Shown: piece after piece, positions 6,712 to 50,474 of the stretch | Layout of the letters: every line of letters starts with the position of its first letter | Position numbering within the stretch: position 1 is the stretch's first letter | Assembly: GCF_902459465.1 (NCBI RefSeq) | Contig: NC_047082.1 | Span: forward strand, 4,154,001-4,218,000 | From: Asterias rubens | Lineage: Eukaryota | Length of the DNA: 64,000 nt | Direction of reading: 5' to 3' | Made by a program: the position numbers and the translations under genes | Notes under the pieces: generated by a model | What the model was told of the DNA's origin: nothing | The model's database searches: none | What the model saw: only the letters and a program-made list of their open reading frames with translations

Positions 6712-7549
6712 GCGCGCATAACATACCATGTCTAAGTTACTTAGCACAACTAGAGTTTGCACAATGTAAAATGGAATTTTAACTGGTGACCATTTTTTGG
6801 GTATTCTGGCATGGTTTTCTTTAAGGGCAATTCCATGGTCAGTCGCATTGCACTTTTCTGTGTAATTTCTTGATCTTAGTGCTAGTAGTTCTGTGTGAGA
6901 TATTCTTTCCACTAAGTTTATATACTGACTTGTACTTGATATCAAAGGCTTTGAATTGAGGATATAAGAAATGTTGTGGGGGTGTCCTCTGAACTTAATA
7001 ACGTTTAGTTGTAAAAAGAGGTCAGTCACATTACAAAAAAGGACATGGTAAAAATACACTGTCAAAATTCAAAAGTTTCCTCTAACTTAAAAACTTGCGA
7101 AAGTTTTACTACATGTAACACACAACTCTTATACGTGAGTATCCAACAGGATACTTATAAATGGTCAGCAACTTTAACTTTTAGGTATACATGGCAAAAC
7201 CACGCTCAGTCGCTTTACGGTCAGTCCAGTTTTCCAGTCAGTTTAGCCAAACCTCATGAAGCCCAAGCTTTTTATTCCGCAAAATTGGGTTAATTTCCTC
7301 GTCAACAACTAAAAATAAATTGGTTTCATATGTTTGTTATAAATTCTAAGTGGAAAGAAAGCTGTGACAGTTTTTGTTTGCTTTGATTTGCCCATAAGCT
7401 TTAGCAGCTCATTTAAATTGGGATCTGACCAGTTATGTTATTCACATGACGTGGTACTCCAGCAAGCATCCTGACCCTACCTTTAAGTACTATCCAGCTC
7501 CAAACATTTTATGTAAAGAGACTACTTGTTTCTGATTGACTTGTTCCAG

Positions 7550-7719
7550 GTACCTGGGTGTGTTTTGGTGAAGGTACTATTGACGTGCAGGACGAGAGAT
7601 GGAAGGATGGTCAGCCAAATAGTAACGGCAATGAGGATTGTGCTTTTGGGGAAGATTCAGGCTGGTTCGATTATAAATGTGACCGTTCCGTTAAATTAAT
7701 CTGTCAGCGCCCTGCGTAA
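7550..7719 (+). pseudogene. Orphan C-type lectin terminal exon (unit A); exon 1 absent from the window
   Basis: Intact acceptor and open frame TWVCFGEGTIDVQDERWKDGQPNSNGNEDCAFGEDSGWFDYKCDRSVKLICQRPA*. Homology to the unit B intron starts at about 6714, right after a TIR element. No matching exon 1 is seen upstream. It could be functional if exon 1 lies left of the window. Confidence 0.65.
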
Positions 7720-8046
7720 ACCAACACAATATGAAAGGTTGCTCAATAATCTGAGCTAACTACTTCTTATAAGGATTAAAGGGGTAGGTGATTAACTGCT
7801 CATTCGCTTTGTGATAATCCTTTTTTTTTTACACCAAGCCACTATTTACTTTTAATATTGGGCTCATTAGTAAGAAGACAAATTAATGTTGCATGCATGG
7901 AGTCATCCATCTTGATAGTTTAATCGAACTATATAAAACTAAATTTATCTGTCACAGCCTCTCTCTGTCTCTATCTCAACTGAGAATGGATAAACACTTG
8001 CATGTAAATCGTTTACTATAACAATTATTTCTGGTTATAATATCAC

Positions 8047-8428
8047 TTAAAGACCTGGACACTCTTGGTAATTGTCAAAGACTAGTCTTCTCACTTGGTG
8101 TATCCCAACATAAGCATAAAATAACAAACCTGTGAAAACTTGAGCTAAATTGGTCATCGAAGTTGCGAGAAAATTAAGAAAGAAAAAACACCCTTGTTGG
8201 ACAAATTTGTGTGCTTTCAGATATATAGGAATAAAATACTTCTGGCTAGAAGTCCTTTATTATTTTAGTGAATAATTACCTCTTTCTCAAAATTTATGCT
8301 GCTTCGAAGGGAGCCGTTTCTCACAATGTTTTATACATTCAACACTGCTATCCAATGCTCGTTACAAAGTCAATTTTTAAGTAAACATTTTGTTTTGAGT
8401 AATTACCAAACGTGTACCTGTCCTTTAG
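8047..8428. mobile_element. Kolobok-like MITE family A copy (empty site present in unit B)
   Basis: TTAA...TTAG flanks; the paralogous site near 13920 has a single TTAA and no insert. Confidence 0.9.
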
Positions 8429-10609
8429 TTAATATTATTGTTCACACAGTGCCCGCAACAACTAACACGCAGAAATAAAGTTCATTCTCATTATTTTGGT
8501 AATAATATAGTTTCATGATTGTGTGAAACAACTAATATAACGTCAATGTTTCGAAAATGTTTCACCAAAAATGCATTTGTGTTAGTACATGCTCAGCACT
8601 GACACCATAGTGACGTCACCGTTAATGTCAGCCCTCTTATAATCAAGTTTTCAGTATAAAACATGACCCTATTTTTATGTTCCTGTAACAGAGAAGCAAT
8701 ATATATTTGTTAAAGATATTAAAGTCGTTTTTGGAACCTTACAATTCTTTCTATGTAAAGAATTTGCAAATTGTTCTACAATCTTGTAAGGAAACTCTTT
8801 AGTGAGGCTGTCATCTTTAAAAAACTGATTATTGCAAACAAGTTTTCATAGCTTTAAAAAATGGTAAATTAGCTTCAGGATAAATAGTATTCATTTTATT
8901 GTTTGAGAGTTATTCGCAAAGTGCAATTTTAAATATTGTTTTTGGCATTGTTATTGTATCAGTATATGTAGTAGTAACCGGTTTACTGTTTAATTTAATT
9001 TAATTATTAACATTCACTAAGTTGGAAAACTGAAGCATTATTAACTTTAAAAACTTATCAGGCAAAACACTACTTCACGCTAACTATAGGGTAAGTCTTA
9101 GAGGTAAGTCTTAGAAAAATCCCCTTTTTGGTCCCAAAACAGAACTAACATAATATATTCATGTAGAATGATCAGGCAGATACCCAACATAAGAAAACAA
9201 ATCACTAAAATCAAAGATTATTTCAGTGTTGTAGAGAATAAAACGTTGGGTCAGGAACTCCTCAAATTTGTGTCGAACGATTTCGCGTTGTAACTAAACT
9301 GCTTCTTTGATTCATTATGAACTAAAAACACTTAAATTGTAAGTTTAGATACTCTAGATGTTTTTCAAATAATTATGTGAACTTCGTTGAATTATATGTG
9401 AAATTTGAATCTTAACACATGAATTTTGGTATCCGTCAAGACAATAGTATCCGTCAGATTAACACATAAGCAAACAATAATTGATGTGAACGATATAAAT
9501 AGTATTGATGATGTTTATTTTTTGAAATACTTGCCCAGCACTGAAAGCTCGAAATAAATTACTGCACAAAAAGCCATGTTTTACTCAGCCTCTCAAAATT
9601 ACAATGCGTTAAACTCTTATACCAACTCGACCTCTAGAAATTAACCTAACCAAACCCCACCCTTCAATTAACCCCTAACCAACCCCGACCTAGACTTGAC
9701 CTCTGGCTTTATCGTCTGCACATGAATCTAGGTGAAAGGTGAAGATGGACGAGGATTAACCATGAGACCTTTCTTTTGTTGATAAACAAACCGCCTTGGT
9801 TGGCATGGTCGGCCGAATGTTAGTACAACACTCAATCGTAAAAACTGATGTTTCAACAAATTTCAACATTTACTGCAAATTTTCAATTAAATAAAATACC
9901 TCTCGATATAAGTTGCTTTATTTTAAACAAAATCAACAAATTTTGTTACATTGTTACCAAAATAGCGATCTATTCTTGATTTGCACTTATGGCTTTCTAT
10001 AGTTTTGGCAAAAACTCGGGCTGTGACGTTGCAAAAGAAAGGTCTATACTCTGTATGGCGTTATTCACGAGAGGCTCGAAGTGTGACGTCAGATGTTCAG
10101 GCTAGCCCCGACCCTTCAAAATATTAACCCGAATGGAAATGAACCAAAGGAGGTGGAGTCAAAAGAGGGCGCTACCAGTTCATTTATGCACTTATTTAGG
10201 CACGTAAACACCATGCACAGGGTCCAATTTCATAGATCCACTTAAAAAAGATCTACTCTTTGATTTTGCAGCATTGGCCGCCATCTTTGATGAAACGTGC
10301 ACGCGTGCAATGCTATCATTGGCTGAGAGTTGTGCGCAGCGCGTACACGCGCCATGCATTTTTCAAAGATGGCGGGGTCAATGACGTCATGTGAAATCTT
10401 TCTATATCAACAGTTGAGGATACCGGTATGTGTACTTCAAGGTTTCCTTAAGTAAGATGACGCCATGCACTTACGTCAATCCAGCCGCCAAAGATCTTTG
10501 AAGTAAACTTTAATGAAATTATGGAATTTCCAAACAGGGCTGGCAAAATAATTTTAATTAATGAGCAATCTCCTTATGATCTCAGAGTAGATTATTCAGT
10601 GCTTATCGT

Positions 10610-10973
10610 TTAAAGGCAGTGGACACTATTGGTTATTACAGAAAATAATTATTAGCATAAAAATTACTTGGCAACAACCAATCGAGAGCTGTTGATAGCT
10701 CAAAACATTGTGAGAAACGGCTCCCTCTGAAGTGACGTAGCTATTGAGAATGATGTAATTTCTCATTCATTTTACATTAGGCCTGAACCTTTTATTGGCG
10801 TTTTGACAGTACACAAATTTGTGCAACAGGGTGTTTTTCTTTCAATTTTCTCTTGCAACTTCAATATGAACAAATGAGTCAATAACGCTCACAAATTTGA
10901 TGCATAGTTGTGATACACCAAGTGAAAATACTGTACTTGTATTTTACATTTAAAAGCTGTCCGGTGCCTTTAA
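10610..10973. mobile_element. Kolobok-like MITE family A copy
   Basis: TTAA flanks, family TIR and body. Confidence 0.85.
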
Positions 10974-11344
10974 GCGATTTACTACGTTTACTAAGCCTTG
11001 CTGTGTACTACTTTTTTTTATTTTTTTTTTATTTTTTTATTTAACGACACGTTTCCAAACTTTCCTTGGCAGAGCTTCAAGGTTGGTAATTTTTTCTTGG
11101 TCGGTTTTTCTACGTGACTTCTACCGGAAGGCAATCGATCATAAAATTGTAGAATAGTTGTTTACGTTACTTGTTGCTTTTGTTGCCAATACCAATATTC
11201 AGTGAGTGCGAGAAGGGTTTCTTTCAAAGCTAACCGACCGTGCTCCTAGACTTCAAGGTTTCTTCGATTAAAATATTGACGCTATGCAGTGACGTCAATA
11301 CAGACGCCATCTTATATCGGGCAGCAATTTCAATTTGTCAAGAG

Positions 11345-13614
11345 ATGGTCAGCAAAATGTTGGCGAGCAAACTGCTGGGTGTTGTTGGTTTATTTATGAT
11401 GGCAGACTACGCTGCTGTTAATGGGCGGTGTTGGAAGAAGGCCCGCGCCGGAGGGACACCTACTGGAGGGACAACTACCGGAGGGACACCTACCGGAGGG
11501 ACACCTACCGGAGGGACACCTACCGGAGGGACACCTACCGGAGGGACGCCTACCGGAGGGACACCTACCGGAGGGACACCTACCGGAGGGACACCTACCG
11601 GAGGGACACCTACCGGAGGGACACCTACCGGAGGGACGCCTACCGGAGGGACGCCTACCGGAGGGACGCCTACCGGAGGGACGCCTACCGGAGGGACACC
11701 TACCGGAGGGACACCTACCGGAGGGACACCTACCGGAGGGACACCTACCGGAGGGACACCTACCGGAGGGACACCTACCGGAGGGACACCTACCGGAGGG
11801 ACACCTACCGGAGGGACACCTACCGGAGGGACACCTACCGGAGGGACACCTACCGGAGGGACACCTACCGGAGGGACACCTACCGGAGGGACACCTACCG
11901 GAGGGACACCTACCGGAGGGACACCTACCGGAGGGACACCTACCGGAGGGACACCTACCGGAGGGACACCTACCGGAGGGACACCTACCGGAGAGACCTC
12001 TACCGGAGGGACACCGCCATGCCCTCCTTCTTGGAGCCAGTTGCAAGGCAAATGCTACAAGATGCATGATGCCTACGTTACATGGGAAGAGGGCAAGCAG
12101 ATTTGTGTTGAGTTGGGTGGGGTGATGGTTGTCCCTCAATCCGAAGAAGAATTACAACACCTCGACAACATCTTCAGTGGTCAATTGTTCTGGATTGGGT
12201 GCACCGACATTGTCGTTGAAGGTTTGTGCACAACTAGAAATTGCTTTTATTTTTCCCTTATCAATAGTTTTATTTTATGCCTTTTGAAGTTGGAAGTCAA
12301 CAACATTCTGAATTTTATTTTGACTTCACCCCTTTTTCGGCTCTCAAATCTGCGTATATACTGAATATCTACAACATTCATGAGGCATTCGCTTTATTTC
12401 CTATTTATACGTCGAAACGTTAACAAAATTACGTGAGTATTTGGCTGTGTTTCTAAAACAAATCATTTATTAAGTTGATATTTTATCAGCCTGGTGAACT
12501 TCTTTTACGATATACCTATTTATAGTCGGGTGCGCCCCATTGCAACATCTTGCTTCTCTTCATGAATAAAATTGTAAGTTACTTTATTCTAAAAGCCATG
12601 AAACATCGTATAACTTACCATGTCCAAGTTTACTTAGCACAACTAGAGTTTACACATGTAAAATGGTATTATAACTGGTGACCATTTTTTGGTATTCTGG
12701 CATGGTTTTCTTCAAGGGCAATTCCATGGTCAGTCGCATTGCACTTTCTGTGTAATTTCTTGATCTTAGTGCTAGTAGTTCTGTGTGAGATATTCTTTCC
12801 ACTAAGTTTATATACTGACTTGTACTTGACACCCAAGGCTTTGAATTAATGATATAAGAAATGTTGTGGGTTTGTCCTCGGGACTTTAATAATAACGTTT
12901 AGTTGTAAAAAGAGGTCAGTCACATTACAAAAAAGGACATGGTAAAAATACACTGTCAAATTTAAAAGTTTCCTCTAACTTAAAAACTTGCAAAAGTTTT
13001 ACTATACATGTAACACACAACTCTTATACGTGAGTATCCAACAGGATACTTATAAATGGGCAGCAACTTTAACTTTTAGGTATACATGGCAAAACCACGC
13101 TTAGTCGCTTTACGGTCAGTACAGTTTTCCAGTCAATTTAGCCAAGCCTCATGAAGCCCAAGCTTTTTATTCCGCAAAATTGGGTTAATTTCCTCGTCAA
13201 CAACTAAAAATAAATTGGTTTCATATGTTTGCTATAAATTCTAAGTGGAAAGAAAGCTGTGACAATTTTTGTTTGCTTTGATTTGCCCATAATCTTTAGC
13301 AGCTCATTTAAATTGGGATCTGACCAGTTATGTTATTCACATGACGTGGTACTCCAGCAAGCATCCTGACCCTACCTTTAAGTACTATCCAGCTCCAAAC
13401 ATTTTATGTAAAGAGACTACTTGTTTCTGATTGACTTGTTCCAGGTACCTGGGTGTGTTTTGGTGAAGATACTATTGACGAACAGGACGAGAGATGGGCT
13501 GCCGGTGAGCCAGATAGTAACGGCAACGAGGATTGCGCTTTGAGGGCTACTTCAGGCTGGTACGATAATGGATGTGACGTTTACACTAATTTAATCTGTC
13601 AGCGCCCTGCGTAA
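11345..13614 (+). CDS. Secreted C-type lectin with N-terminal (GGTPT)x38 Thr/Gly/Pro-rich stalk (unit B), 348 aa, 2 exons
   Basis: Exon 1 is 11345-12221: MVSKMLASKLLGVVGLFMMADYAAVNG (signal-like), 38 x 15-bp repeats at 11450-12019, then CPPSWSQLQGKCY...FWIGCTDIVVEG. GT donor at 12222; ttccag acceptor. Exon 2 is 13445-13614: TWVC...WAAGEPDSNGNEDCA...GWYDNGCD...LICQRPA*. Phases match (1/1). CTL hallmarks are present: WIG, the EPD sugar motif, WYD in place of WND, and the conserved Cys residues. Confidence 0.92.
11450..12019 (+). repeat. Coding minisatellite, 15-bp unit (GGAGGGACACCTACC) x38
   Basis: Seen directly. Internal variants are mostly ACA/ACG, which are synonymous in the GGTPT frame. 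Confidence 0.98.
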
Positions 13615-15173
13615 ATCAACACAATATGAAAGGTTGCTCAATAATCTGAGCTAACTACTTCTTATAAGGATTAAAGGGGTAGGTGATTAACTGCTCATTC
13701 GCTTTGTGATAATCTTTTTGTTTAACACCAAGCCACTATTTACTTTTAATATTGGGCTCATTGGTAAAAAGACAAATTAATGTTGCACGCATGGAGTCAT
13801 CCATCTTGATATTTTAATCGAACTAATAAATTCACAGCCTGTCTCTGTCTCCATCTCAACTGAAAATGGAGCAATACTGGCATGGAAATCGTTTACTATA
13901 TTTCTTGTTATAATATCACTTAATTAATTTTATTGTTCATAGTGCCCGTAAAAACTAACCCTTTAGAAATAAAGTTCATTTTTGTCATAGTATTATAGTT
14001 TCATGATTGTGTGAAATAAACATAACGTCAATGTTTCGAAAATGTTTCACCAAGAATGCAGTTATGCTAGTACATGTTCAGCATTACACCAATAGTGACG
14101 TTACCGTTAACGTCAGTGGAACATGACCCTGTTTTCCTTTTCCCTGAAACAGAGTAAATAGCAACATATTTCTTTTAAAAGATATTAAAGTCTTTTTTGG
14201 AACCTTACAACTCTTTCTATGTAAAGAATTTGCAAATTGTTTTACAAATCTTGTAAGGAATGTCTTTTCTGAGGCTGTCATCTTTAAAAAACTGATTATT
14301 GCAAACAAGTTTTCTTAGCTTTAAAAAATGGTAAATTAGCTTCAGGATAAATAGTATTCATTTTATTGTTTGAGAGTTATTCGCAAAGTGCAATTTTAAA
14401 TATTGTTTTTGGCATTGTTATTGTATCAGTATATGTAGTAGTAACCGGTTTACTGTTTAATTTAATTATTAACATTCACTAAGTTGGAAAACTGAAGCAT
14501 TATTAACTTCAAAAACTTATCAGGCAAAACACTACTTCACGCTAACTATAGGGTAAGTCTTAGAAAAATCCCCCTTTTGGTCCCAAAACAGAAGAACTAA
14601 TAACATATGATATTCATGTAGAATGATCAGGCAGATACCCAACATAAGAAGAAAACAAATCACTAAAATCAAAGATTATTTCAGTGTTGTAGAGAATAAA
14701 ACGTTGGGTCAGGAACTCCTCAAATTTGTGTCGAACGATTTCGCATTGTAACTAAATTGCTTCTTTGATTCATTATGAACTAAAATGAAATTGTAAGTTT
14801 AGATATTCTAGATGTTTTTCAAATAATTATGTGAACTTCGTTGAATAATATGTGAAACTTGAATCTTAACACATGAATTTTTGTTTTACCTATATGGTTA
14901 CACGATTTAAACAAAATTATGATGGCCCTGGAAAAGCCGATTGGTTTAGTCTCAACATTTCAACAACTGTACTCTCGTCGTTGTCACTGTCTCCTAAAAC
15001 GACTGCTTTAGAGCACACTACATTGAATAAACCAACCGGCTCTCACAGAGACATCACCTCAATTAGTTTTCAAGAAGAGACAACTTTATATGTGTCTCCG
15101 TCAAACTAACATTACTTTATTAAAAAGTGTATACCTTTAATTGATTTAATAATATGTGTCGATCTAACATTAA

Positions 15174-16152: not shown

Positions 16153-16744
16153 ACTCACCCCAATTCTGCATGGTCCTTCAATATTATTTCTAGCCAACCA
16201 TGACCCTTCACGACCGAATCTAACCATCCCCGACCTTCACAAATCAATCCTTTAATTAACAACCTGTCCCATTACAAGTAACCCTAACAACCCATCCCGA
16301 CCCTTTCAAAATTCGGTAATTTACTTTGAAGTAAGCGCTCAAAATAAATTTAACAAAGCACTGTGATATTAACACTGTGCTAGTGTAAATGAACAGTGTC
16401 AGTGAGAAAGTAAGCCAATTATACTCTTTGTGAACGTGACTTTCTGAACCATATCTTATTAGTTGCTCTAGTTGGACAAACAATTAAGAGATTTTGTTTA
16501 AAACCAAGCCTCCACATTGTTTAAACAGGAAGTCACGCTAGGCATAACAAAAGATTTCACGGTCCATTTGTCTTATAGCAGGGCTGTTTGGTAGCAAGGT
16601 TTCTAATACTGCGCCATTATGCATGACCCAAATTCATAATCAATTCGCGTTGCGCTGTGTCTTTTGTGTGACTCGACGAGTCGTGTTTTTACTGGCAGTT
16701 AAGGATCTCGGCGCAATTTGACAGCAATTTCAATTTGTCAAGAG

Positions 16745-17097
16745 ATGGTCTGCACTATGTTGGCGAGCAAATTGCTGGGTGTTTTTGGTATAGTTATGAT
16801 GGCAAACTACACTGCCGTTACCGGAGGGACACCTACCGGAGGGACCCCTACCGGAGGGACGCCTACCGGAGGGACCCCTACCGGAGGGACGCCTACCGGA
16901 GGGACACCTACCGGAGGGACACCTACCGGAGGGACCCCTACCGGAGGGACGCCTACCGGAGGGACCCTTACCGGAGGGACGCCTACCGGAGGGACACCTA
17001 CCGGAGGGACACCTACCGGAGGGACCCTACCGGAGGGACGCCTACCGGAGGGACCCTTACCGGAGGGACACCTACCGGAGGCCTAATATTGTGCTAA
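16745..17097 (+). CDS. Lectin-less paralog (unit C): signal peptide + 17 GGTPT-type repeats + LILC*, with one 1-nt frameshift near 17026
   Basis: 5' end aligns with unit B (cagcaatttcaatttgtcaagagATGGTC). Repeat 14 lacks one C of a CCCC run, which is either a real lesion or a homopolymer sequencing error. The tail resembles the unit B 3'UTR at about 13749-13805. Confidence 0.6.
16823..17080 (+). repeat. 15-bp minisatellite x17 with 90-bp higher-order structure
   Basis: Thr codon order is ACA,[ACC,ACG,ACC,ACG,ACA,ACA]x2,ACC,ACG,ACC,ACA. Confidence 0.95.
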
Positions 17098-18624: not shown

Positions 18625-19250
18625 TCACCACTAACCCTCCCTCCCCAACCACCCACTAACCCAACCTCCCTCTGCAACCACCCATCATCCAACCCTACTT
18701 ACCAAACCACCCTCCTCCCTAACTCATAAACCTACCCCCCCCCTCCCCAACCACCTACCAACCAACACTCCATCCCCAAACAGCCCAACAAAACCAACCG
18801 TCCTTGCCCATCCTCACTCCCCAACCACACCAACCTCTCTCTGCAACCACCTATCAACCAACCCTCCCCAACCAACCTCCTCCCTAAATACTCATATACA
18901 CCCAACCTCCCTCCCCAACCTACCACTAACCCAACCTCCCTCTGCAACAACCTATCAACAAACCATCCATCAACCAACCTCCTCCCTAAATACTCATATA
19001 CACCTAACCTCCCTCCCCAACCTACCACTAGTTGTGACAACGCAACCCCCCTCTGCAACCACCTATCAACCAACCATCCATCAACCAACCTCCCCCTAAA
19101 TACTCATATACACCTACCCTCCCTCCCCAACCTACCACTAACCCAACCTCCCTCTGCCCCCACCTATCAACCAACCATCCACCAACCAACCCTCCTCACC
19201 AAATAATGTACTCATAAACCTACACTCCTCCCCAACCAACAACCCTCCCA
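18625..19250. repeat. C/A-rich degenerate minisatellite (period about 85-105 bp)
   Basis: Recurring cctccctccccaacctaccactaacccaacctccctctgcaacc...taaatactcatatacacc; almost no G on the + strand. Confidence 0.9.
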
Positions 19251-21026: not shown

Positions 21027-24000
21027 ATGGGCCCTCTTGTGGGGGAATGTGGCCATTGGGGTCTGGCTGTCGTAACCGCCTCGTTCACTGTCCATCTTCT
21101 GGTTAAGGTGGTAACACGCTGTGCTGGAGTATTGTTTCTAAGCTTTCAAAATGAGTTCCAGAGTTCAACTGCACAGACAGGCGCCATCTTTAGTATCATG
21201 TCATCCTCATCATACATAGGAAGTAAGAATTACTTATCTTTAGCCACTAAAAACAACAAAGTGACAACGGAAATATGACCCGAAGTGCTAACAGTTTTCC
21301 TTGTTAAAAGAAACATCTCGAACTCGGCAGATGATCCAACAGAACCAGAAGAAAATATCATCTCAGTATTTACAGAATTACAATTAATAACAGGCTACTG
21401 TTTTTATTTTACTTCGACTACAAATCATTTCAATATCTAGGTCCGATTTCGAGCCGAATTGACCCCAAGATTCAGATTGAATACCTCTTTCAAAGACTCG
21501 AAAACATTACTGTAAAAATCCATTACAATTCCATCCAACCAATCAGCAGGGCTCTTATTTATATAATTCACTTACTTCTGGTACACAAGATCATTGATGT
21601 ATCGTCAGGACCTCCTCTCAATCGGTGGGCAAAAGTCACTGATATTTATTTATGGTTTATTTTTTATTTATTCAGATACGATAGGTGGTGTGTTAGGGAA
21701 TCATCTGAACTGTCGCTCTACTGCTATACTTGGTAGTATATTTTACACTGCTGGGACAATAAGCTGCAGCTTTACAACAAATATTTATCAGATGTACTGT
21801 ACAAGTGCTCTGGCAGGTAAGATACAGGCATAGGCATCTAATACATGTACTTCATATCAATCGCGGGGAATCTATAGACACACCAGGGGTGGATTTCACA
21901 AAGAGTTAGGACTAGTCTTATCTCGAGTTAGGACCAGTTACTCGTCCTAACTTTAGGACTATCCATGCAATGTGTATGTCTCCTAGGACTAGTCCTAACT
22001 TTGTGAAATCGACCCCAGGCCTGAAAGCCACTTCAAGGCTACAACCCATTTTTTCTTTGGCCCGTTGCCACCTACTCCAGGGCTGAAACAGGGTTACCCC
22101 CTTTACAGTCCATACGGATGTAGGCTTGGGTACAATTATCCACCCAAGCCTGGCTGGTAGAGCCGAAAGCAAGCACTAACTCCCCAACTTCACGAAGCAA
22201 TCATGATCAAGTGTCGCGCTAGAATGAGAATGAGAGGTCACGTTCCTGACCAACTGGCCGGGTATATATTATCATCTAAAAGGCTGGTGTAAAAGTTAAA
22301 CAGCAAACGTGAGTGTATACATGTTGTTTTAATACGTATTTCAGGTATTCGGGTGCATTCAGGTCTTCCCAGTGCAGTTTCTCCCCTGTCTTTCGTTACA
22401 AGATAGACCATATTTAATAAATTAGAATAATCACAAATTTTCTATTCTGGTTGCTGTGTTCGAAGATGGGAGTCACCTTCTGTTATTTTCAGTCGATACT
22501 TTACTAACTGGTATACGCTGAATACATGGAAGTCACAAATGATGTAAGTTTCCCTTCTTTCCTTACTGTAGGACTAGGTGGTGGAATTACTGTAATACCG
22601 GCAGTTGTAATGGTCGCTAAGTACTTCAAGAGATATTACCCCTTAGCGTGTGGAATTTCAACATCTGGACTTGACATTGGAATGTTGGTGTTTGCTCCAT
22701 TGATGCAGCTATTACTGGATACTTATGGATGGAGGGGAGCAATGCTCGTAACTGGAGCATTTGTGGGTAATGTTTTTGCAGCTGGGGCACTTTTTCGCCC
22801 AGTACGGTCGTCTTCACAGACAGGAGACAAGAAGAGCACAGAAGAACATGTTGAACAAGGGGAAGACAAAGAAATGCTGAAGGATAATAATGAGAATCAC
22901 AGATCAACGCAGAGTGAAGATCATGGAATCAACGAAGTGAAGACCCAGAACCAATTACAAAGTACCGATGCAACGAACATCACTTTGAAGTCGCAACGCC
23001 AGAGGAATCTATTCTCCGCAGCCGCCAATTCACTTCGGCTACATCTTCTCAGTGAATCTTATCGCCTCTCTTTGATTATCTTCGCTCAAGTCGTAGCTTA
23101 CCTCGTTGCTTATACTTGTTTCATTATGTTCTTAGTCCCATTTGCCACATCATCTGGTATTTCAGAGCAGGATGCATCTTTTCTTATAAGTGTCTGTGGA
23201 ATTGGCGGGATTGTTGGACGTCTTATTTGTGGAGTCCTAACTAAGAAAGCCTCATCTTACGTCATCTACCAGGTGTCCATGTTTGTGAGTGGATGTGCCG
23301 TCTTGCTGGTGCAACTTGGTACGACCTGGATTTACATTTCTGCATCCATGGTTGGAATAACATACGGAATACAGTACACAATCTGGCGGGTGATGATGCT
23401 GGAGTTAGTTGGAGTGGATAACATGGGGTCTGCCATTGGAATCTACTCAAGCATTGGGATTCCCTTTACAGTCACAGTGCCCATCTTATCAGGTACCGTT
23501 CCCTTGTATCAATTGATAATAAATTTCAAACATGAATGCAAGGTGATTCTCAATATTTGGACTATCCAAGTTCCTTACAAGCTAACACAATAGCTAATAC
23601 AAATTTAACATAAACTTTCTTTTAAAGACAAGCAAATCATCTGCCATGACTGATCGGATGTGTGCTTCGGCCACGGCTTGAATTTAAGTTCCAAAATAGG
23701 CCGTGTGAGCTATAAAATGTCTTCCATCGACGTGGCTTCGAATTAGAAGGACAAATCCCAAGAGCCAATCCAAGGTTCAAAGTCGACGGGGAAAAGCTTA
23801 AAGAAACAAATGACACTCCAAACTGTTTCACAAAGTTGTTATTCGTTCTTTTAGAGTTTTAGCAGAAGACCTGGCCGGAGAGTTTAGCTCAAATTGTTCG
23901 GTTTATAGCAAAAGGATTTCTGGCATGTATATATTCATTGATATATATTATTTATTTTTACACAGGAGCCCTCTACGATACAACCGAGAGCTACTCTATT

Positions 24001-48237: not shown

Positions 48238-50213
48238 TTACATGGGTTCGCAGATGGGCATCCCGTCGCAGGCATTTTCATAATACGGTGTAAATAGCTG
48301 GGCTATGGTGACGATGGGGAACATGACGAAGGCCCCAATCATGGATCCAACCTGAGTGATACCGCCGTACCAGATCAAGAGGGAGCGGTTGTTGGGCTGA
48401 CTGCGAAGGATCCATGCAATGGTGGCCTTGGTGTATACCAGTAGGCCACTGACTAACACCCATGATAGGATCTGTAACAGTCAAGAAAACAAGATGGTGG
48501 TCAGAATGGATAACCAAACAAATTATACTGCATGGGAATCCATGTTTTCTGACGGGAAAACCATCCTTCCAATCAACAAACACAAACACCCCACTAAACA
48601 TTAACGGCCTTCCAACAAGCAAACAAACAAACAAACAAATAACAAACAAACAAACAAATAAACATACAAACAAACAAACAAACAAATAAACAAACAAGCA
48701 AATAAACAGTATGATGGCATGGGAAATGCTTCACTATAAAGAGAGCAAACGTTCATTTAAAATTGCCGAAAGTTGGCAACTGTTTTCTGATTCCAATAGA
48801 CACCAACAATTTCATCCCTTGCATAATGTGTCTACGCGACTATTTCATGGTCATCGGCTTATTCTTTTGTGCTTTTCTGCAATGTGACATGACTTATCCT
48901 GAAGTGTATTGTGCTGTGACTTATACCAATAGTATGTTTATATACATGGTAAGTTTTTTACTTACAATAAGTACGGCACCTCCAATTTCGTGTTGCAGCG
49001 GTGGGGTTGGGCTGAGTGCCGCCGTCAGAAAGCAGAAACTCCCCGCGAGCGTGCCTGCAGCTGCCGTCACCCCAACCAATACAAGATTCCTGCTTGGTAG
49101 CAGCATCACCAACGTGGCAGCAACGGGGTTGGCAATATTAGCCATTGTGGATGCCAGGAGATAGGTGTTGAATCCGTATGGAGCGCACGAGTAGGTCTGG
49201 ATGGATGGTAGAGCACCGTTACTGAGTGCAGTTACGAAGGCTAAGACACCAAACAGGTAGATGTAGTTGAACCGGGTTAGGGTGTGATTTGTGGTCTGGA
49301 CATCTTTGGATGAGTCTGTGGGTGGTGTCTCCGTTACGTCGGGACCGGAGATATCCTGGGATGAAGAAGTCTCGTCGCTTGTTCCATAGACCAGCACAGC
49401 ACGGCTCTCAGCACAACTCATTGTCACAGATGTTTTTGGCAAAGTACTTGATTTTGGTTTTCGAATCAGGTGCTCACGTTTTGCCAGGGGTAGATAGTTA
49501 AGCAAGGTGAACGCGATCAGGCATGTCATCATCATTGCAAAGAGGAAGCCAAAGAACTCCTGAGGTTGGAATCTAGCTGGGGAATCCACCTGCTTCCAGT
49601 TCGTGCATATCTGCTCCGTGGTGACATTGTCAATCACGGTGTAGTTGATATAGGTGTTGTTGGCGACACACTCGACATTCCCGACCCCCTGGATAAGCGC
49701 CACAATGCTGGGGAGCAGAGAGCTCAGACCTTCCCCGACGAAATACCAGGTGAGGTACGAGTTCTTGAGGATCGACATGAAAGGTGTGAAGGCAACAGAC
49801 GAGGTGCAGTCCACGATGGATAAGAAGAACGCCAAGCACAGCAACGCCGTGCTATGAAGACTGCCATCTAGGTCCCATACCGTATAGGCATCCCAGAAAA
49901 ATACAAGCAACAAGGTTGAGACGCAACCTATGGACACGATTATGAAGACTGTTGGTATTTCCACATGCTTCCCTTTAGGTGAAAAGTAGTTGACCAGAGA
50001 GAAAATCAAGGGTCCAACATTAGCGATTTGGATGATCACGGTCAGGTAGGTGGCCAAGTTGTAACCTTCTGGGATGTTCAGGGACACCAAGAGTGGGAGT
50101 TGCACCCATAACCCATTGATGGCGACCCAGGAGCCCGTTCCGAAGAGCAGGACGAGAATTATGACCGGGATTCGCACCGCAGGGGGACTCTTCTCTTCGG
50201 CGTCGTCAGCCAT
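48238..50213 (-). CDS. SLC52A3: SLC52 riboflavin transporter (SLC52A3-like), 493 aa
   Basis: Exons 50213-48966 and 48471-48238, phase 0. Motifs FGTGSWVAINGLWVQLPLLV, IQIANVGP, VDCTSSVAFTPFM, GEGLSSLLPS, NGALPSIQTYSCAPYG and GGITQVGSMIGA are typical of SLC52. The exact vertebrate paralog is not resolvable. Confidence 0.93.
48618..48706. repeat. (AAAC)n microsatellite in the SLC52 intron
   Basis: Seen directly. Confidence 0.95.
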
Positions 50214-50474
50214 TATACAAAGGAGTTGGTGGTAAAAAATACCAAGTAAGTGTCGTTCAGTCAGCAAGCTGTATAAATGAAAGATTTATTGTGTTATTTT
50301 TTTTCTCATGACTGCATTCCGTGACTCCAGCCAACAAATATCTCGAGAGCAGTATTAATCGCATGAGATCCGTTACCGCAACCAACATTTAGCGACTTGT
50401 TCCTAAGTCTATAACAAACAGCCCAGTAACTGTTACTTACAGGGCCTTGGCTTGGCTGACGGAAAACAAGCTGT

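What the first reader, a model, noticed from the sequence alone, without database searches (positions are those of the whole stretch)
11345..13614. Secreted lectin on a 190-residue (GGTPT)38 stalk
Seen: signal-like N-terminus, a short basic RCWKKAR segment with one unpaired Cys, 38 near-perfect pentapeptides and a C-terminal CTL domain. I do not recognise this repeat from any named protein. Known: echinoderm spicule-matrix proteins combine CTL domains with Pro/Gly-rich repeats, and Thr-Pro-rich tracts are usually O-glycosylated. Inference: a flexible glycosylated tether, possibly dimerised through the lone Cys, acting in mucus, adhesion, biomineral matrix or defence. An ice-binding role via the TxT spacing is only speculation.
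Basis: partly seen in the sequence, partly recalled or inferred. Interest (0 to 1): 0.7.

Follow-up and report, generated by a model that had tools for sequence, protein, structure and literature searches.

The report
Sea-star lectin on a threonine-rich repeat stalk
This is a real two-exon sea-star gene for a secreted C-type-lectin-domain protein held on a 190-residue Gly-Thr-Pro repeat stalk; it belongs to a fast-evolving Asterias lectin family whose stalks range from 5 to 92 repeats, and the public annotation keeps only its lectin domain.

Summary
Exon 1 (11345-12221) and exon 2 (13445-13614) are joined across a phase-1 GT..AG intron and encode 348 aa. [quoted passage not shown] The repeat is a 15-bp array of 37.9 copies at 97% identity. 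Lectin_C scores 59 bits and the closest solved relative is the DC-SIGNR CRD.

The genome is almost certainly Asterias rubens chromosome 22. The public A. rubens protein P0031 (109 aa) equals residues 240-348 exactly. It therefore uses the same splice junction, but it starts at an internal Met and misses the signal peptide and stalk.

The gene is not unique. A. rubens has seven intact stalked paralogs with 5 to 92 units, dozens of stalkless ~160-aa paralogs, and two fragments beside this gene. A. amurensis has stalked relatives that carry automatic names only.

Best reading: a secreted mucin-stalked CTLD protein for glycan recognition or cross-linking, possibly dimerised through the family-conserved Cys29. 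Sugar binding is unproven, because the site reads EPD/E/WYD rather than EPN/E/WND. Transcript evidence is thin. The biomineral and ice-binding ideas have no support.

The scan had already noted this cluster on this same stretch of DNA (s1-150134, s1-150373, s1-150828).

Verdict: a new variant of a known kind, of moderate interest.

The parts
11311..11344 (+). Conserved upstream block with a TATA-like TTATATC (11312-11318) and a short leader ending in AAGAG just before the ATG
   Evidence: An alignment of 160 bp upstream of the ATG shows this block in W_B, p1020, p4238, p4063 and pC1. The fragment at 16745 lacks the TATA-like part. Promoter function is inferred.
11345..12221 (+). Exon 1 (877 nt): signal peptide, RCWKKARA, the repeat stalk and the N-terminal half of the CTLD
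   Evidence: The donor is GAAG|GTTTGT. The same phase-1 donor position is used in all modelled paralogs.
11345..11425 (+). Signal-peptide-like residues 1-27, with inferred cleavage after AVNG
   Evidence: Read directly from the sequence and conserved across the family. No predictor was run.
11426..11449 (+). RCWKKARA (residues 28-35), containing Cys29, the ninth and odd cysteine
   Evidence: Cysteine census. RCWK is conserved in stalkless paralogs immediately before the CTLD.
11448..12015 (+). 15-bp minisatellite of 37.9 copies encoding (GGTPT)38, the stalk (residues 36-225)
   Evidence: TRF score 1066 at 97% matches, unit census, composition.
12020..12221 (+). CTLD N-terminal half (residues 226-293), from CPPSW to WIGCTDIVVE
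   Evidence: Lectin_C E 1e-6 on this piece alone. It is 71-79% identical to Asterias C-type lectins.
12222..13444 (+). Phase-1 intron (1223 nt, GT..AG) containing high-copy repeat segments
   Evidence: Very high contig depth at 12709-12897 and 13024-13275 in the DNA runs.
13445..13614 (+). Exon 2 (170 nt including the stop): CTLD C-terminal half with EPD (314-316), E321 and WYD (331-333)
   Evidence: Lectin_C E 8e-4 alone. The public protein P0031 spans the junction and matches 100%. The exon sequence is unique in the genome, the next copy being 84% identical.
13825..13830 (+). First AATAAA after the stop codon (an ATTAAA lies at 13670); a candidate polyadenylation signal
   Evidence: Pattern scan. 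Its use was not tested.
6715..8050 (+). Partial duplicate 'unit A': the 3' part of the intron, an orphan copy of exon 2 (7550-7719) and the 3' flank
   Evidence: 92% identity to 12607-13923. No exon 1 lies within 12 kb upstream. The exon is 16.5% diverged against 3.1% for the intron.
16722..17081 (+). Partial duplicate 'unit C': signal peptide joined directly to 17.6 repeat units, with a 14-bp unit that shifts the frame and no CTLD

Best explanation
The locus is an intact two-exon gene of Asterias (almost certainly A. rubens chromosome 22). It encodes a secreted 348-aa protein.

After signal-peptide removal, the mature chain would start at RCWKKARA. It continues as about 190 residues of (GGTPT)38 and ends in a long-form C-type lectin-like domain of the DC-SIGN/collectin type.

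Proposed mechanism:
- The Thr-Pro-Thr cores of the repeat are O-glycosylated. This turns the stalk into an extended mucin-like rod, on the order of 50 nm long if stretched.
- Cys29, at the far N-terminal end, forms an interchain disulfide. Two lectin domains then sit at the ends of two long flexible arms.
- The CTLD binds a glycan or other surface ligand, so the molecule cross-links or tethers targets in body fluid or surface mucus, as a humoral recognition or agglutinin molecule.
- Stalk length is set by slippage of a 15-bp minisatellite that grew out of a single GGTP linker between the conserved Cys and the CTLD. Paralogs carry 5 to 92 units.

Shown here: the gene structure, the domain identity, the family context, and the repeat's origin and variability.

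Inferred: secretion, O-glycosylation, dimerisation, ligand binding and tissue.
For: Gene model. The ORF, splice sites and frame are consistent. The public A. rubens protein P0031 is 100% identical to residues 240-348 and crosses the predicted junction.

Domain. Lectin_C scores 59.2 bits. The DC-SIGNR/DC-SIGN CRDs are the best solved relatives at E 4e-17, with the GNEDCA and SGW.DN.CD blocks aligned.

Species. The genome is 417.6 Mb, contig C22 is 12,346,083 bp, and that is also the contig length recorded for A. rubens proteins.

Family.
- Seven stalked paralogs have complete models of 179-619 aa. All keep the phase-1 donor and the conserved acceptor.
- Stalkless paralogs read RCWK-PCPP.
- Single-unit intermediates read RCWKKAPSTAGTPQCP (L027/P0020) and RCWKKAPITGGTPQCPP (P0002).
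- A. amurensis P0012 has 13 units where its A. rubens counterpart p4063 has 7. P0021 has a different TPS-rich 7-mer stalk on the counterpart of p1025. The stalk therefore changes in sequence and length but stays Thr/Pro/Gly/Ser-rich.

Constraint. Among distinct unit types in the intact genes, the Thr-Pro-Thr codons show 8 synonymous against 2 replacement changes, while the two Gly codons show 6 against 9. The only frame-shifting unit is in the CTLD-less fragment at 16745.

Transcription hints.
- Run X5 (kind unknown) holds an intron-less join of a paralog exactly at the homologous exon boundary. The two DNA runs of the source organism do not.
- X5 also holds a 153/153-nt exact contig of this gene's exon 2, and has no cover on unique intron stretches.
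- That exon sequence is unique in the genome.

Stalk. There is no predicted structure and pLDDT is below 50.

Precedents. The DC-SIGN neck is built of tandem repeats that set oligomerisation, and LSECtin dimerises through neck cysteines (PMC7276794). EPD-motif lectins such as scallop CfLec-1 are active (PMC3039652).
Against: - No RNA run could be listed for the gene. The exon-2 contig in X5 has a depth of only 2.9, stops at the stop codon, and comes from a run of unrecorded type.
- The public annotation gives only a 109-aa product without signal peptide or stalk. Nothing yet shows a transcript that carries the whole array.
- The Asn of WND, a Ca2+ and sugar ligand in canonical C-type lectins, is Tyr here. 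Classical Ca2+-dependent sugar binding may therefore be altered or lost.
- The two neighbouring units are decayed fragments, so this is a region of gene birth and death.
- All + frames of the array are open, so the array itself carries little coding signal. The codon counts are small and the units are not independent.
- O-glycosylation, signal-peptide cleavage and disulfide dimerisation were not testable with these tools.
- The CTLD structure model was too poor to check the disulfide geometry (pLDDT 52).
Confidence: 0.55

Rival explanations
1. The gene is a young duplicate that is silent or on its way to decay. On this reading the long array is a neutral minisatellite expansion inside a former linker, and any product is the stalk-less CTLD of the public model or nothing at all.
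For: - No RNA holder was listed.
- The public model starts at the internal Met240.
- The flanking units A and C are fragments, and another array-bearing copy (p4236a) has a truncated CTLD.
- 30 of 38 units are identical, which points to a very recent expansion.
- The array is open in all three + frames regardless of selection.
- The WND Asn is lost.
Against: - The 348-aa ORF is intact, with every core CTLD residue, all 8 structural Cys, canonical splice sites and the family's conserved upstream block.
- A CTLD without a signal peptide but with six structural Cys is an implausible product. All paralogs have the signal peptide in the same exon.
- Six other stalked paralogs are also intact. Stalks persist, with different sequence, between A. 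rubens and A. amurensis.
- Thr-Pro-Thr codons change mostly synonymously.
- An exact exon-2 contig sits in a run that also holds spliced family transcripts.
Confidence: 0.22
2. It is a structural or adhesive matrix protein: a skeletal (ossicle) matrix component like the sea-urchin SM50/SM30 CTLD proteins, or a component of tube-foot adhesive or cuticle. On this reading the repeat is the working part and the CTLD serves as an anchoring module.
For: - Echinoderm spicule-matrix proteins combine a CTLD with Pro/Gly-rich repeats (textbook knowledge, not tested here).
- Glycoproteins and lectin-type domains are reported in echinoderm adhesive secretions (titles and abstracts listed).
Against: - The closest relatives are small soluble EPN/QPD-type CRDs of the DC-SIGN/collectin kind.
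- The repeat is N-terminal and 40% Thr, with no Asn, Gln or acidic residues.
- The family is a large tandem, fast-diverging cluster with variable ligand-site residues, which is the usual pattern for recognition molecules.
- No proteomic paper was found that names this family.
Confidence: 0.1
3. It is an ice-binding or antifreeze glycoprotein that acts through regularly spaced glycosylated Thr residues.
For: Only the regular Thr spacing. One bacterial hit to the repeat carries an ice-binding family name, but the match lies in its Thr/Pro/Gly linker.
Against: - The unit is GGTPT, not the Ala-Ala-Thr unit of the antifreeze glycoproteins.
- A C-terminal CTLD and an N-terminal Cys have no role in that mechanism.
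- Sea stars are osmoconformers, isosmotic with sea water, and are not expected to need antifreeze (general knowledge).
- Stalk sequence is not conserved between species.
Confidence: 0.01

Closest known systems
DC-SIGN / DC-SIGNR (CD209 / CLEC4M) and other group II C-type lectin receptors
   Same: - They are the closest solved CRDs by sequence (E 4e-17).
- The order along the chain is the same: N-terminal anchor, then a tandem-repeat neck, then a C-terminal CRD.
- The neck is built of repeats whose number controls how the CRDs are presented (PMC7276794).
   Different: - Those are type II membrane proteins with 23-residue helical repeats that form a coiled-coil tetramer. Here there is a cleavable-looking signal peptide and a 5-residue Gly/Thr/Pro unit that cannot form a coiled coil.
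- The Ca2+ site reads EPD/WYD instead of EPN/WND.
Collectins (MBL, SP-A, SP-D)
   Same: Both are soluble, with a short N-terminal Cys-containing segment, a long Gly/Pro-rich repetitive stalk and a C-terminal CRD. In the collectins the multivalent reach comes from the stalk plus N-terminal disulfides. Collectin CRDs are found at E 1e-8.
   Different: There is no Gly-X-Y triplet periodicity (the period here is 5), so a collagen triple helix is not possible. There is no helical neck, since the stalk runs straight into CPPSW. There is only one Cys.
Stalked Asterias paralogs and relatives (A. amurensis 'CD209 antigen-like protein C' P0012 and P0003, 'snaclec 27-like' P0021; A. rubens loci at C22:4.88, 4.65, 1.02, 1.025 and 4.06 Mb and on C1)
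   Same: They share the signal peptide, the RCWK segment, a Thr/Pro/Gly stalk, the CTLD and the phase-1 intron. They are true family members.
   Different: Unit number differs (5-92) and in part unit sequence (GGTTPST; GAAAPSTEGTPT). Ligand-site residues differ (QPD/WND, QPD/WHN, EPD/WHD and others). None is characterised, their names are automatic, and no counterpart above 70% CTLD identity was found in A. amurensis.
Mucin-domain glycoproteins, and CTLD proteins with O-glycosylated stalks (group 14 CTLD proteins; Dectin-1)
   Same: All have Pro/Thr-rich tandem repeats as an extended spacer. Group 14 proteins carry a mucin-like region (PMC6852297). The Dectin-1 stalk is O-glycosylated and is itself a ligand of another C-type lectin (PMC9788829). 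Both points come from the titles and abstracts listed.
   Different: Those are membrane proteins of vertebrates with irregular Ser/Thr-rich regions. Here the protein is secreted, with a near-perfect pentapeptide array and 40% Gly. Glycosylation is not shown.
Sea-urchin spicule matrix proteins (SM50, SM30 family)
   Same: They are echinoderm secreted proteins that combine a CTLD with Pro/Gly-rich repeats (general knowledge).
   Different: Their repeats are C-terminal and Thr-poor, and their CTLDs are divergent. No sequence link to that family appeared in any search here, and homology to it was not tested directly.

Membership tests
C-type lectin-like domain superfamily (Pfam PF00059) | Profile match above the curated threshold over the whole domain | tested here: met
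   P0031 (residues 240-348) scores 59.2 bits against a cutoff of 22.6, covering profile positions 4-107 of 107. Both exon halves also match on their own.
C-type lectin-like domain superfamily (Pfam PF00059) | Four core cysteines, the WIG motif and the long-form N-terminal cysteine pair | tested here: met
   Cys254, 323, 336 and 344 align with the core cysteines of DC-SIGNR. WIGC replaces WMGL. Cys226 and Cys237 lie in C-P-P-x-W...C-Y. An extra family-invariant pair is present at Cys286/Cys297. The pairing itself was not verified, because the model was too poor.
Ca2+-dependent carbohydrate-binding C-type lectins (functional CRDs) | Ca2+ site 2 ligands: EPN or QPD, a downstream Glu, and WND | tested here: not met
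   The gene has EPD (314-316), E321 and WYD (331-333), so the WND Asn is Tyr. EPD alone is compatible with activity (PMC3039652). Paralogs vary at this position (WND, WHD, WDD, WFD, WKD). It should be filed as a CTLD; lectin activity remains open.
Collectins | Collagen-like Gly-X-Y stalk and a helical coiled-coil neck | tested here: not met
   The unit is 5 residues long (GGTPT) with no triplet periodicity. No Collagen Pfam hit was found on exon 1. No helix is predicted between the stalk and the CTLD.
Group II type II membrane C-type lectin receptors (DC-SIGN type) | N-terminal cytoplasmic tail and a transmembrane signal anchor of about 20 residues | tested here: not met
   Only 9 residues precede an 11-residue hydrophobic core, which is followed by small residues (AVNG). 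This reads as a cleavable signal peptide. No predictor was run.
Mucin-type (PTS) tandem-repeat domains | Pro/Thr/Ser-rich tandem repeats | tested here: met
   The 190 residues contain T76 and P37 with no hydrophobic or aromatic residue. The 37.9 copies are 97% identical.
Mucin-type (PTS) tandem-repeat domains | Dense O-glycosylation of the repeats | not testable with these tools
   No glycosylation predictor or data were available. The claim is inferred from Pro next to each Thr.
Asterias RCWK small secreted CTL family (defined here) | Shared signal peptide, RCWK Cys, CPPxWSQW start, WIGC...EGTWVC pair, a phase-1 intron after E-G and an LICQRP end | tested here: met
   Alignment A1 and the paralog models. 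The gene is 60-70% identical over the CTLD to 25 family proteins.
Sea-urchin spicule matrix CTLD proteins | Homology to the SM50/SM30 CTLD, C-terminal Pro/Gly/Asn/Gln repeats and expression in skeletogenic cells | not tested
   No reference sequence was brought in. None of the searches returned such proteins.

The most novel reading that the evidence does not exclude
The stalked subfamily could be a self-organising lectin-mucin system with built-in diversity. Stalked members mostly carry the galactose-type Asp at the third position of the ligand-site motif (QPD, EPD or APD). If their stalks carry GalNAc-type O-glycans, each molecule would be both a lectin and a ligand. Disulfide-linked dimers could then gel into, or dock onto, mucus networks. 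Minisatellite slippage (5-92 units, probably length-polymorphic) would tune reach, and an unusually divergent ligand-loop exon would tune specificity. This would make it a germline diversity-generating recognition family specific to asteriid sea stars.
Probability: 0.12. Interest if true: 0.65.

Novelty: new variant of a known kind. Interest (0 to 1): 0.4.

Why it matters
- It corrects a public gene model. The A. rubens protein on record for this locus is a 109-aa CTLD with no signal peptide, and the paralog at 4.88 Mb is truncated in the same way. The full proteins are 348 aa and 559 aa, with long repeat stalks. Anyone mining sea-star proteomes or transcriptomes with the current annotation would miss them.
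- It shows a stepwise route from a one-unit linker (GGTP) to stalks of up to 92 units, inside a tandemly expanding immune-type lectin family.
- The design resembles the collectins and the DC-SIGN neck: an N-terminal Cys, a repetitive stalk and a C-terminal CRD. Here it is built from a mucin-like pentapeptide.
- If the stalks are length-polymorphic and glycosylated, the family would be a workable model for how reach and valency of soluble lectins evolve in an animal without adaptive immunity.
- It does not open a new category of system.

Tried and rejected
- **RNA evidence.** Two run searches listed no RNA run. The single read-laying run was restricted to 12016-13900 to avoid the long repeat, so repeat-length variation could not be examined.
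- **Structure.** The single-sequence AlphaFold2 model of exon 1 had mean pLDDT 39. The CTLD model built on a 25-row family alignment had mean pLDDT 52. Both were too poor for fold searches or disulfide checks, so no fold search was run.
- **Frame-openness test of the arrays.** It was uninformative, because the other + frames are open too.
- **Tree of the CTLD N-half (24 paralogs, 204 nt).** Only 2 of 21 inner branches were well supported. Stalked genes were scattered, so one versus several origins of the stalk cannot be decided.
- **Gene conversion as the cause of the divergent exon 2.** No closer donor exists in this assembly. Units A and B are each other's best match at 84%, and the next is at 76-77%.
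- **P0041, the best hit to the repeat.** It is an unrelated minisatellite with different codons in a 49% GC contig, and no CTLD lies nearby. The other repeat hits are Thr/Pro/Gly linkers of bacterial secreted enzymes, a compositional match only.
- **The look-up of encoding contigs for P0031.** It returned nothing.
- **Literature.** Searches for the repeat, for the family name with Asterias, and for sea-star lectin expansions found no description of this protein.
blastn found no similarity between the sequence after 17081 and 10500-14600.
- **Typed full-length protein.** The spliced full-length protein was never typed into a tool because it has no reference. P0031 and the exon references were used instead.
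Full report
**What is there.** The + strand between 11345 and 13614 holds a two-exon gene. Exon 1 (11345-12221) starts with an ATG and ends at GAAG|GTTTGT. Exon 2 (13445-13614) follows TTCCAG| and ends with TAA. The two exons add up to 1047 nt, or 348 codons, and the intron is phase 1.

Tandem Repeats Finder reports a 15-bp array at 11448-12015 with 37.9 copies, 97% matches, no indels and score 1066. Thirty units are identical and five differ only by a silent ACA to ACG change. In the gene's frame the array reads GGTPT. Residues 36-225 are T76, G75, P37, E1 and S1.

**Domain identity.** The two halves of the C-terminal domain match Pfam Lectin_C separately, at E 1e-6 and 8e-4. A public protein, P0031 (109 aa, Asterias rubens, named automatically 'C-type lectin domain family 4 member M-like'), is 100% identical to residues 240-348 of my spliced model. 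It scores 59.2 bits, E 7.5e-16, over the whole profile. Its best solved relatives are the CRDs of DC-SIGNR and DC-SIGN (E 4e-17 to 1e-13), followed by langerin, SP-D, SP-A, tetranectin and MBP-A.

The nine cysteines are at 29, 226, 237, 254, 286, 297, 323, 336 and 344.
- Residues 226 and 237 are the long-form N-terminal pair.
- Residues 254/344 and 323/336 are the core pairs by alignment.
- Residues 286 and 297 (WIGC and TWVC) are invariant in the family.
- Cys29 is the odd one.

The ligand site reads EPD (314-316), E321 and WYD (331-333), where DC-SIGNR has EPN, E and WND. EPD occurs in active scallop lectins (PMC3039652). Loss of the WND Asn means that classical Ca2+-dependent sugar binding cannot be assumed.

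**Whose genome, and what the annotation says.** The assembly has 417.6 Mb in 150 contigs, and the window is C22:4154001-4218000. C22 is 12,346,083 bp long, which is exactly the contig length recorded for the A. rubens proteins P0001, P0020, P0031 and P0040. The gene is therefore almost certainly on A. rubens chromosome 22.

The public model for this locus (P0031) begins at the internal Met240, so it lacks the signal peptide, Cys29, the stalk and the first cysteine pair. P0040 is the same kind of truncation of the paralog at 4.88 Mb. No protein of 90-511 aa with the full architecture of this gene is in the database. The public model does confirm the splice junction. The N-terminal 239 residues are new relative to it.

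**The family.** A DNA search of the genome with exon 1 gave 73 matches.

Most are stalkless genes in which the signal peptide and RCWK run straight into PCPP. They lie mainly in clusters on C22 (3.93-4.89 Mb), C1 and C7.

Seven genes carry a stalk and have complete two-exon models with the same donor phase and acceptor:

| Gene | Stalk | Protein length |
|---|---|---|
| pC1 | 5 units | 179 aa |
| p4063 | 7 units | 190 aa |
| p1025 | 98-aa diverged stalk | 260 aa |
| This gene | 38 units | 348 aa |
| p1020 | 239-aa stalk mixing GGTPT with a 12-mer | 393 aa |
| p4884 | 80 units | 559 aa |
| p4654 | 92 units | 619 aa |

Intermediates with a single unit exist: RCWKKAPSTAGTPQCP in L027/P0020, and RCWKKAPITGGTPQCPP in A. 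amurensis P0002. The array therefore looks like an expansion of a short linker between the conserved Cys and the CTLD.

A. amurensis has stalked relatives with automatic names. P0012 has 13 units and is the counterpart of p4063. P0021 has a GGTTPST stalk and is the counterpart of p1025. P0003 and P0019 are also stalked. Stalks thus change in length and even in unit sequence between sister species, but remain Thr/Pro/Gly/Ser-rich.

A tree of the CTLD N-half is too poorly resolved to say whether the stalk arose once.

**Local context.** Within the window the gene is flanked by two partial copies.
- Unit A (6715-8050) keeps the 3' part of the intron, an exon-2 copy (7550-7719) and the 3' flank. 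It has no exon 1 within 12 kb, because the next upstream gene has its own exon 2.
- Unit C (16722-17081) keeps the signal peptide fused directly to 17.6 units. One unit is 14 bp long and shifts the frame, and there is no CTLD.
- Further downstream lie an MFS-transporter exon and an SLC52 riboflavin-transporter gene.

**Is it used?** This is the weak point.
- No RNA run could be listed.
- When contigs of four runs were laid on 12016-13900, run X5, of unrecorded type, differed from the DNA runs. It has no cover on the unique intron stretches.
- X5 holds a contig that joins 12211 to 13443 with eight intervening letters. These give the exon-exon sequence of a paralog (…IQTEG|TW…). The two DNA runs of the source organism lack that join.
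- X5 also holds a 153/153 exact contig of this gene's exon 2, at depth 2.9. That exon sequence is unique in the genome, the next copy being 84% identical.

This is a hint of low-level transcription, not proof, and nothing shows a transcript that carries the array.

Indirect support:
- The upstream block 11311-11344, with a TATA-like element, is shared with other intact paralogs but is incomplete in fragment C.
- Among distinct unit types in the intact genes, the Thr-Pro-Thr codons show 8 silent against 2 replacement changes, while the Gly codons show 6 against 9. The counts are small and the units are not independent.
- The only frame-shifting unit seen is in the fragment.

**How it most likely works.** The hydrophobic core of the N-terminus is 11 residues long. 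That fits a cleavable signal peptide and is too short for a membrane anchor, so the protein should be secreted and start near RCWK (inferred).

The stalk has no hydrophobic residue, and every Thr has a neighbouring Pro. It is predicted to be unstructured and is the kind of sequence that animals O-glycosylate densely (general knowledge, not tested). That would give an extended rod on the order of 50 nm.

Cys29 is conserved in the whole family. In stalkless members it lies three residues before the CTLD, and in stalked members it has been carried to the far end of the stalk. If it makes an interchain disulfide, as neck cysteines do in LSECtin (PMC7276794), the product is a dimer with two CTLDs on long flexible arms. 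That is a cross-linker or tether for glycan-bearing targets in coelomic fluid or surface mucus.

The layout parallels two known designs. Collectins have an N-terminal Cys, a repetitive stalk and a C-terminal CRD. DC-SIGN has a tandem-repeat neck that presents the CRD. The layout is reached here with a mucin-like pentapeptide, so the protein works like those lectins without being a member of either family. There is no Gly-X-Y periodicity, no coiled coil and no membrane anchor.

**Rivals.**
- A silent or decaying young duplicate is the main alternative (about 0.2).
- Ice binding is negligible.

**Side observations on specificity.** Between units A and B, exon 2 differs at 28 of 170 positions (16.5%). 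The adjoining intron differs at 26 of 831 (3.1%), and the last 250 bp of the intron and the first 150 bp of the 3' flank are almost identical. Both silent and replacement sites are raised (pS 0.156, pN 0.173), and no closer donor exists in the assembly. Either an unsampled conversion donor or intense diversification of the ligand loops is at work.

Stalked family members carry Asp at the third position of the site motif (QPD, EPD or APD) in 9 of 11 cases, against 5 of 19 stalkless ones (Fisher p 0.007). This test is not corrected for relatedness and includes counterpart pairs from the two species.

**Novelty.** The CTLD, mucin-like spacers and repeat necks are all known. Stalked relatives already sit in A. 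amurensis annotation under automatic names. No paper describes the repeat or the family. The finding is a new variant of a known kind. Its practical value is the annotation correction, and its evolutionary interest is a linker-to-stalk expansion series.

Noticed in passing
window 7550-7719 versus 13445-13614: The orphan exon-2 copy of unit A differs from this gene's exon 2 at 16.5% of positions, while the adjoining intron differs at 3.1% and the nearest 250 bp of intron are almost identical. Differences cluster in the ligand-loop codons (13498-13590). Silent and replacement sites are both raised (pS 0.156, pN 0.173), and no closer donor exists in the assembly.
   Followed up: partly
window 16722-17081: A fragment has the family signal peptide fused directly to 17.6 GGTPT units (RCWKKARA is deleted). 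One unit is 14 bp and shifts the frame, a stop follows soon after, and there is no CTLD. The sequence after 17081 shows no similarity to this gene's 3' region.
   Followed up: partly
G000:C22:4883903-4888470 (L013) and C22:4650900-4654233 (L014): Two paralogs carry far longer stalks: 80 units (559 aa) and 92 units with a higher-order pattern of E/R/S/V variants (619 aa). Both models are intact, with QPD sites. The public protein for the first (P0040, 110 aa) is truncated at an internal Met, like P0031.
   Followed up: partly
family-wide (alignment A1): Stalked members mostly have Asp at the third position of the Ca2+-site motif (9 of 11), and stalkless ones mostly Asn (14 of 19 are not Asp). 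Fisher p is 0.007, not corrected for relatedness.
   Followed up: partly
window 12709-12897 and 13024-13275 (intron): Contig depth in the DNA runs is hundreds of times higher here than in the flanks, with many loose ends. These are high-copy interspersed repeats inside the intron.
   Followed up: no
window 22526-23593 (+) and 48921-50267 (-): There is a long open exon matching the Major Facilitator Superfamily (E 8e-30) and a single-exon SLC52 riboflavin-transporter gene (E 5e-125). The lectin cluster ends before them.
   Followed up: no
window 18830-19245: A tandem array with a 101-111-bp unit, rich in C and A, of about 3.6 copies at 86% identity. It lies just downstream of the lectin-less fragment.
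   Followed up: no
P0035 (ENA contig, 156 aa): An environmental short-read contig joins the signal peptide of one paralog (p4063 type) to four repeat units and the CTLD of another (p4884 type). This is probably an assembly collapse across the shared minisatellite, and it is a warning for any short-read reconstruction of these genes.
   Followed up: no
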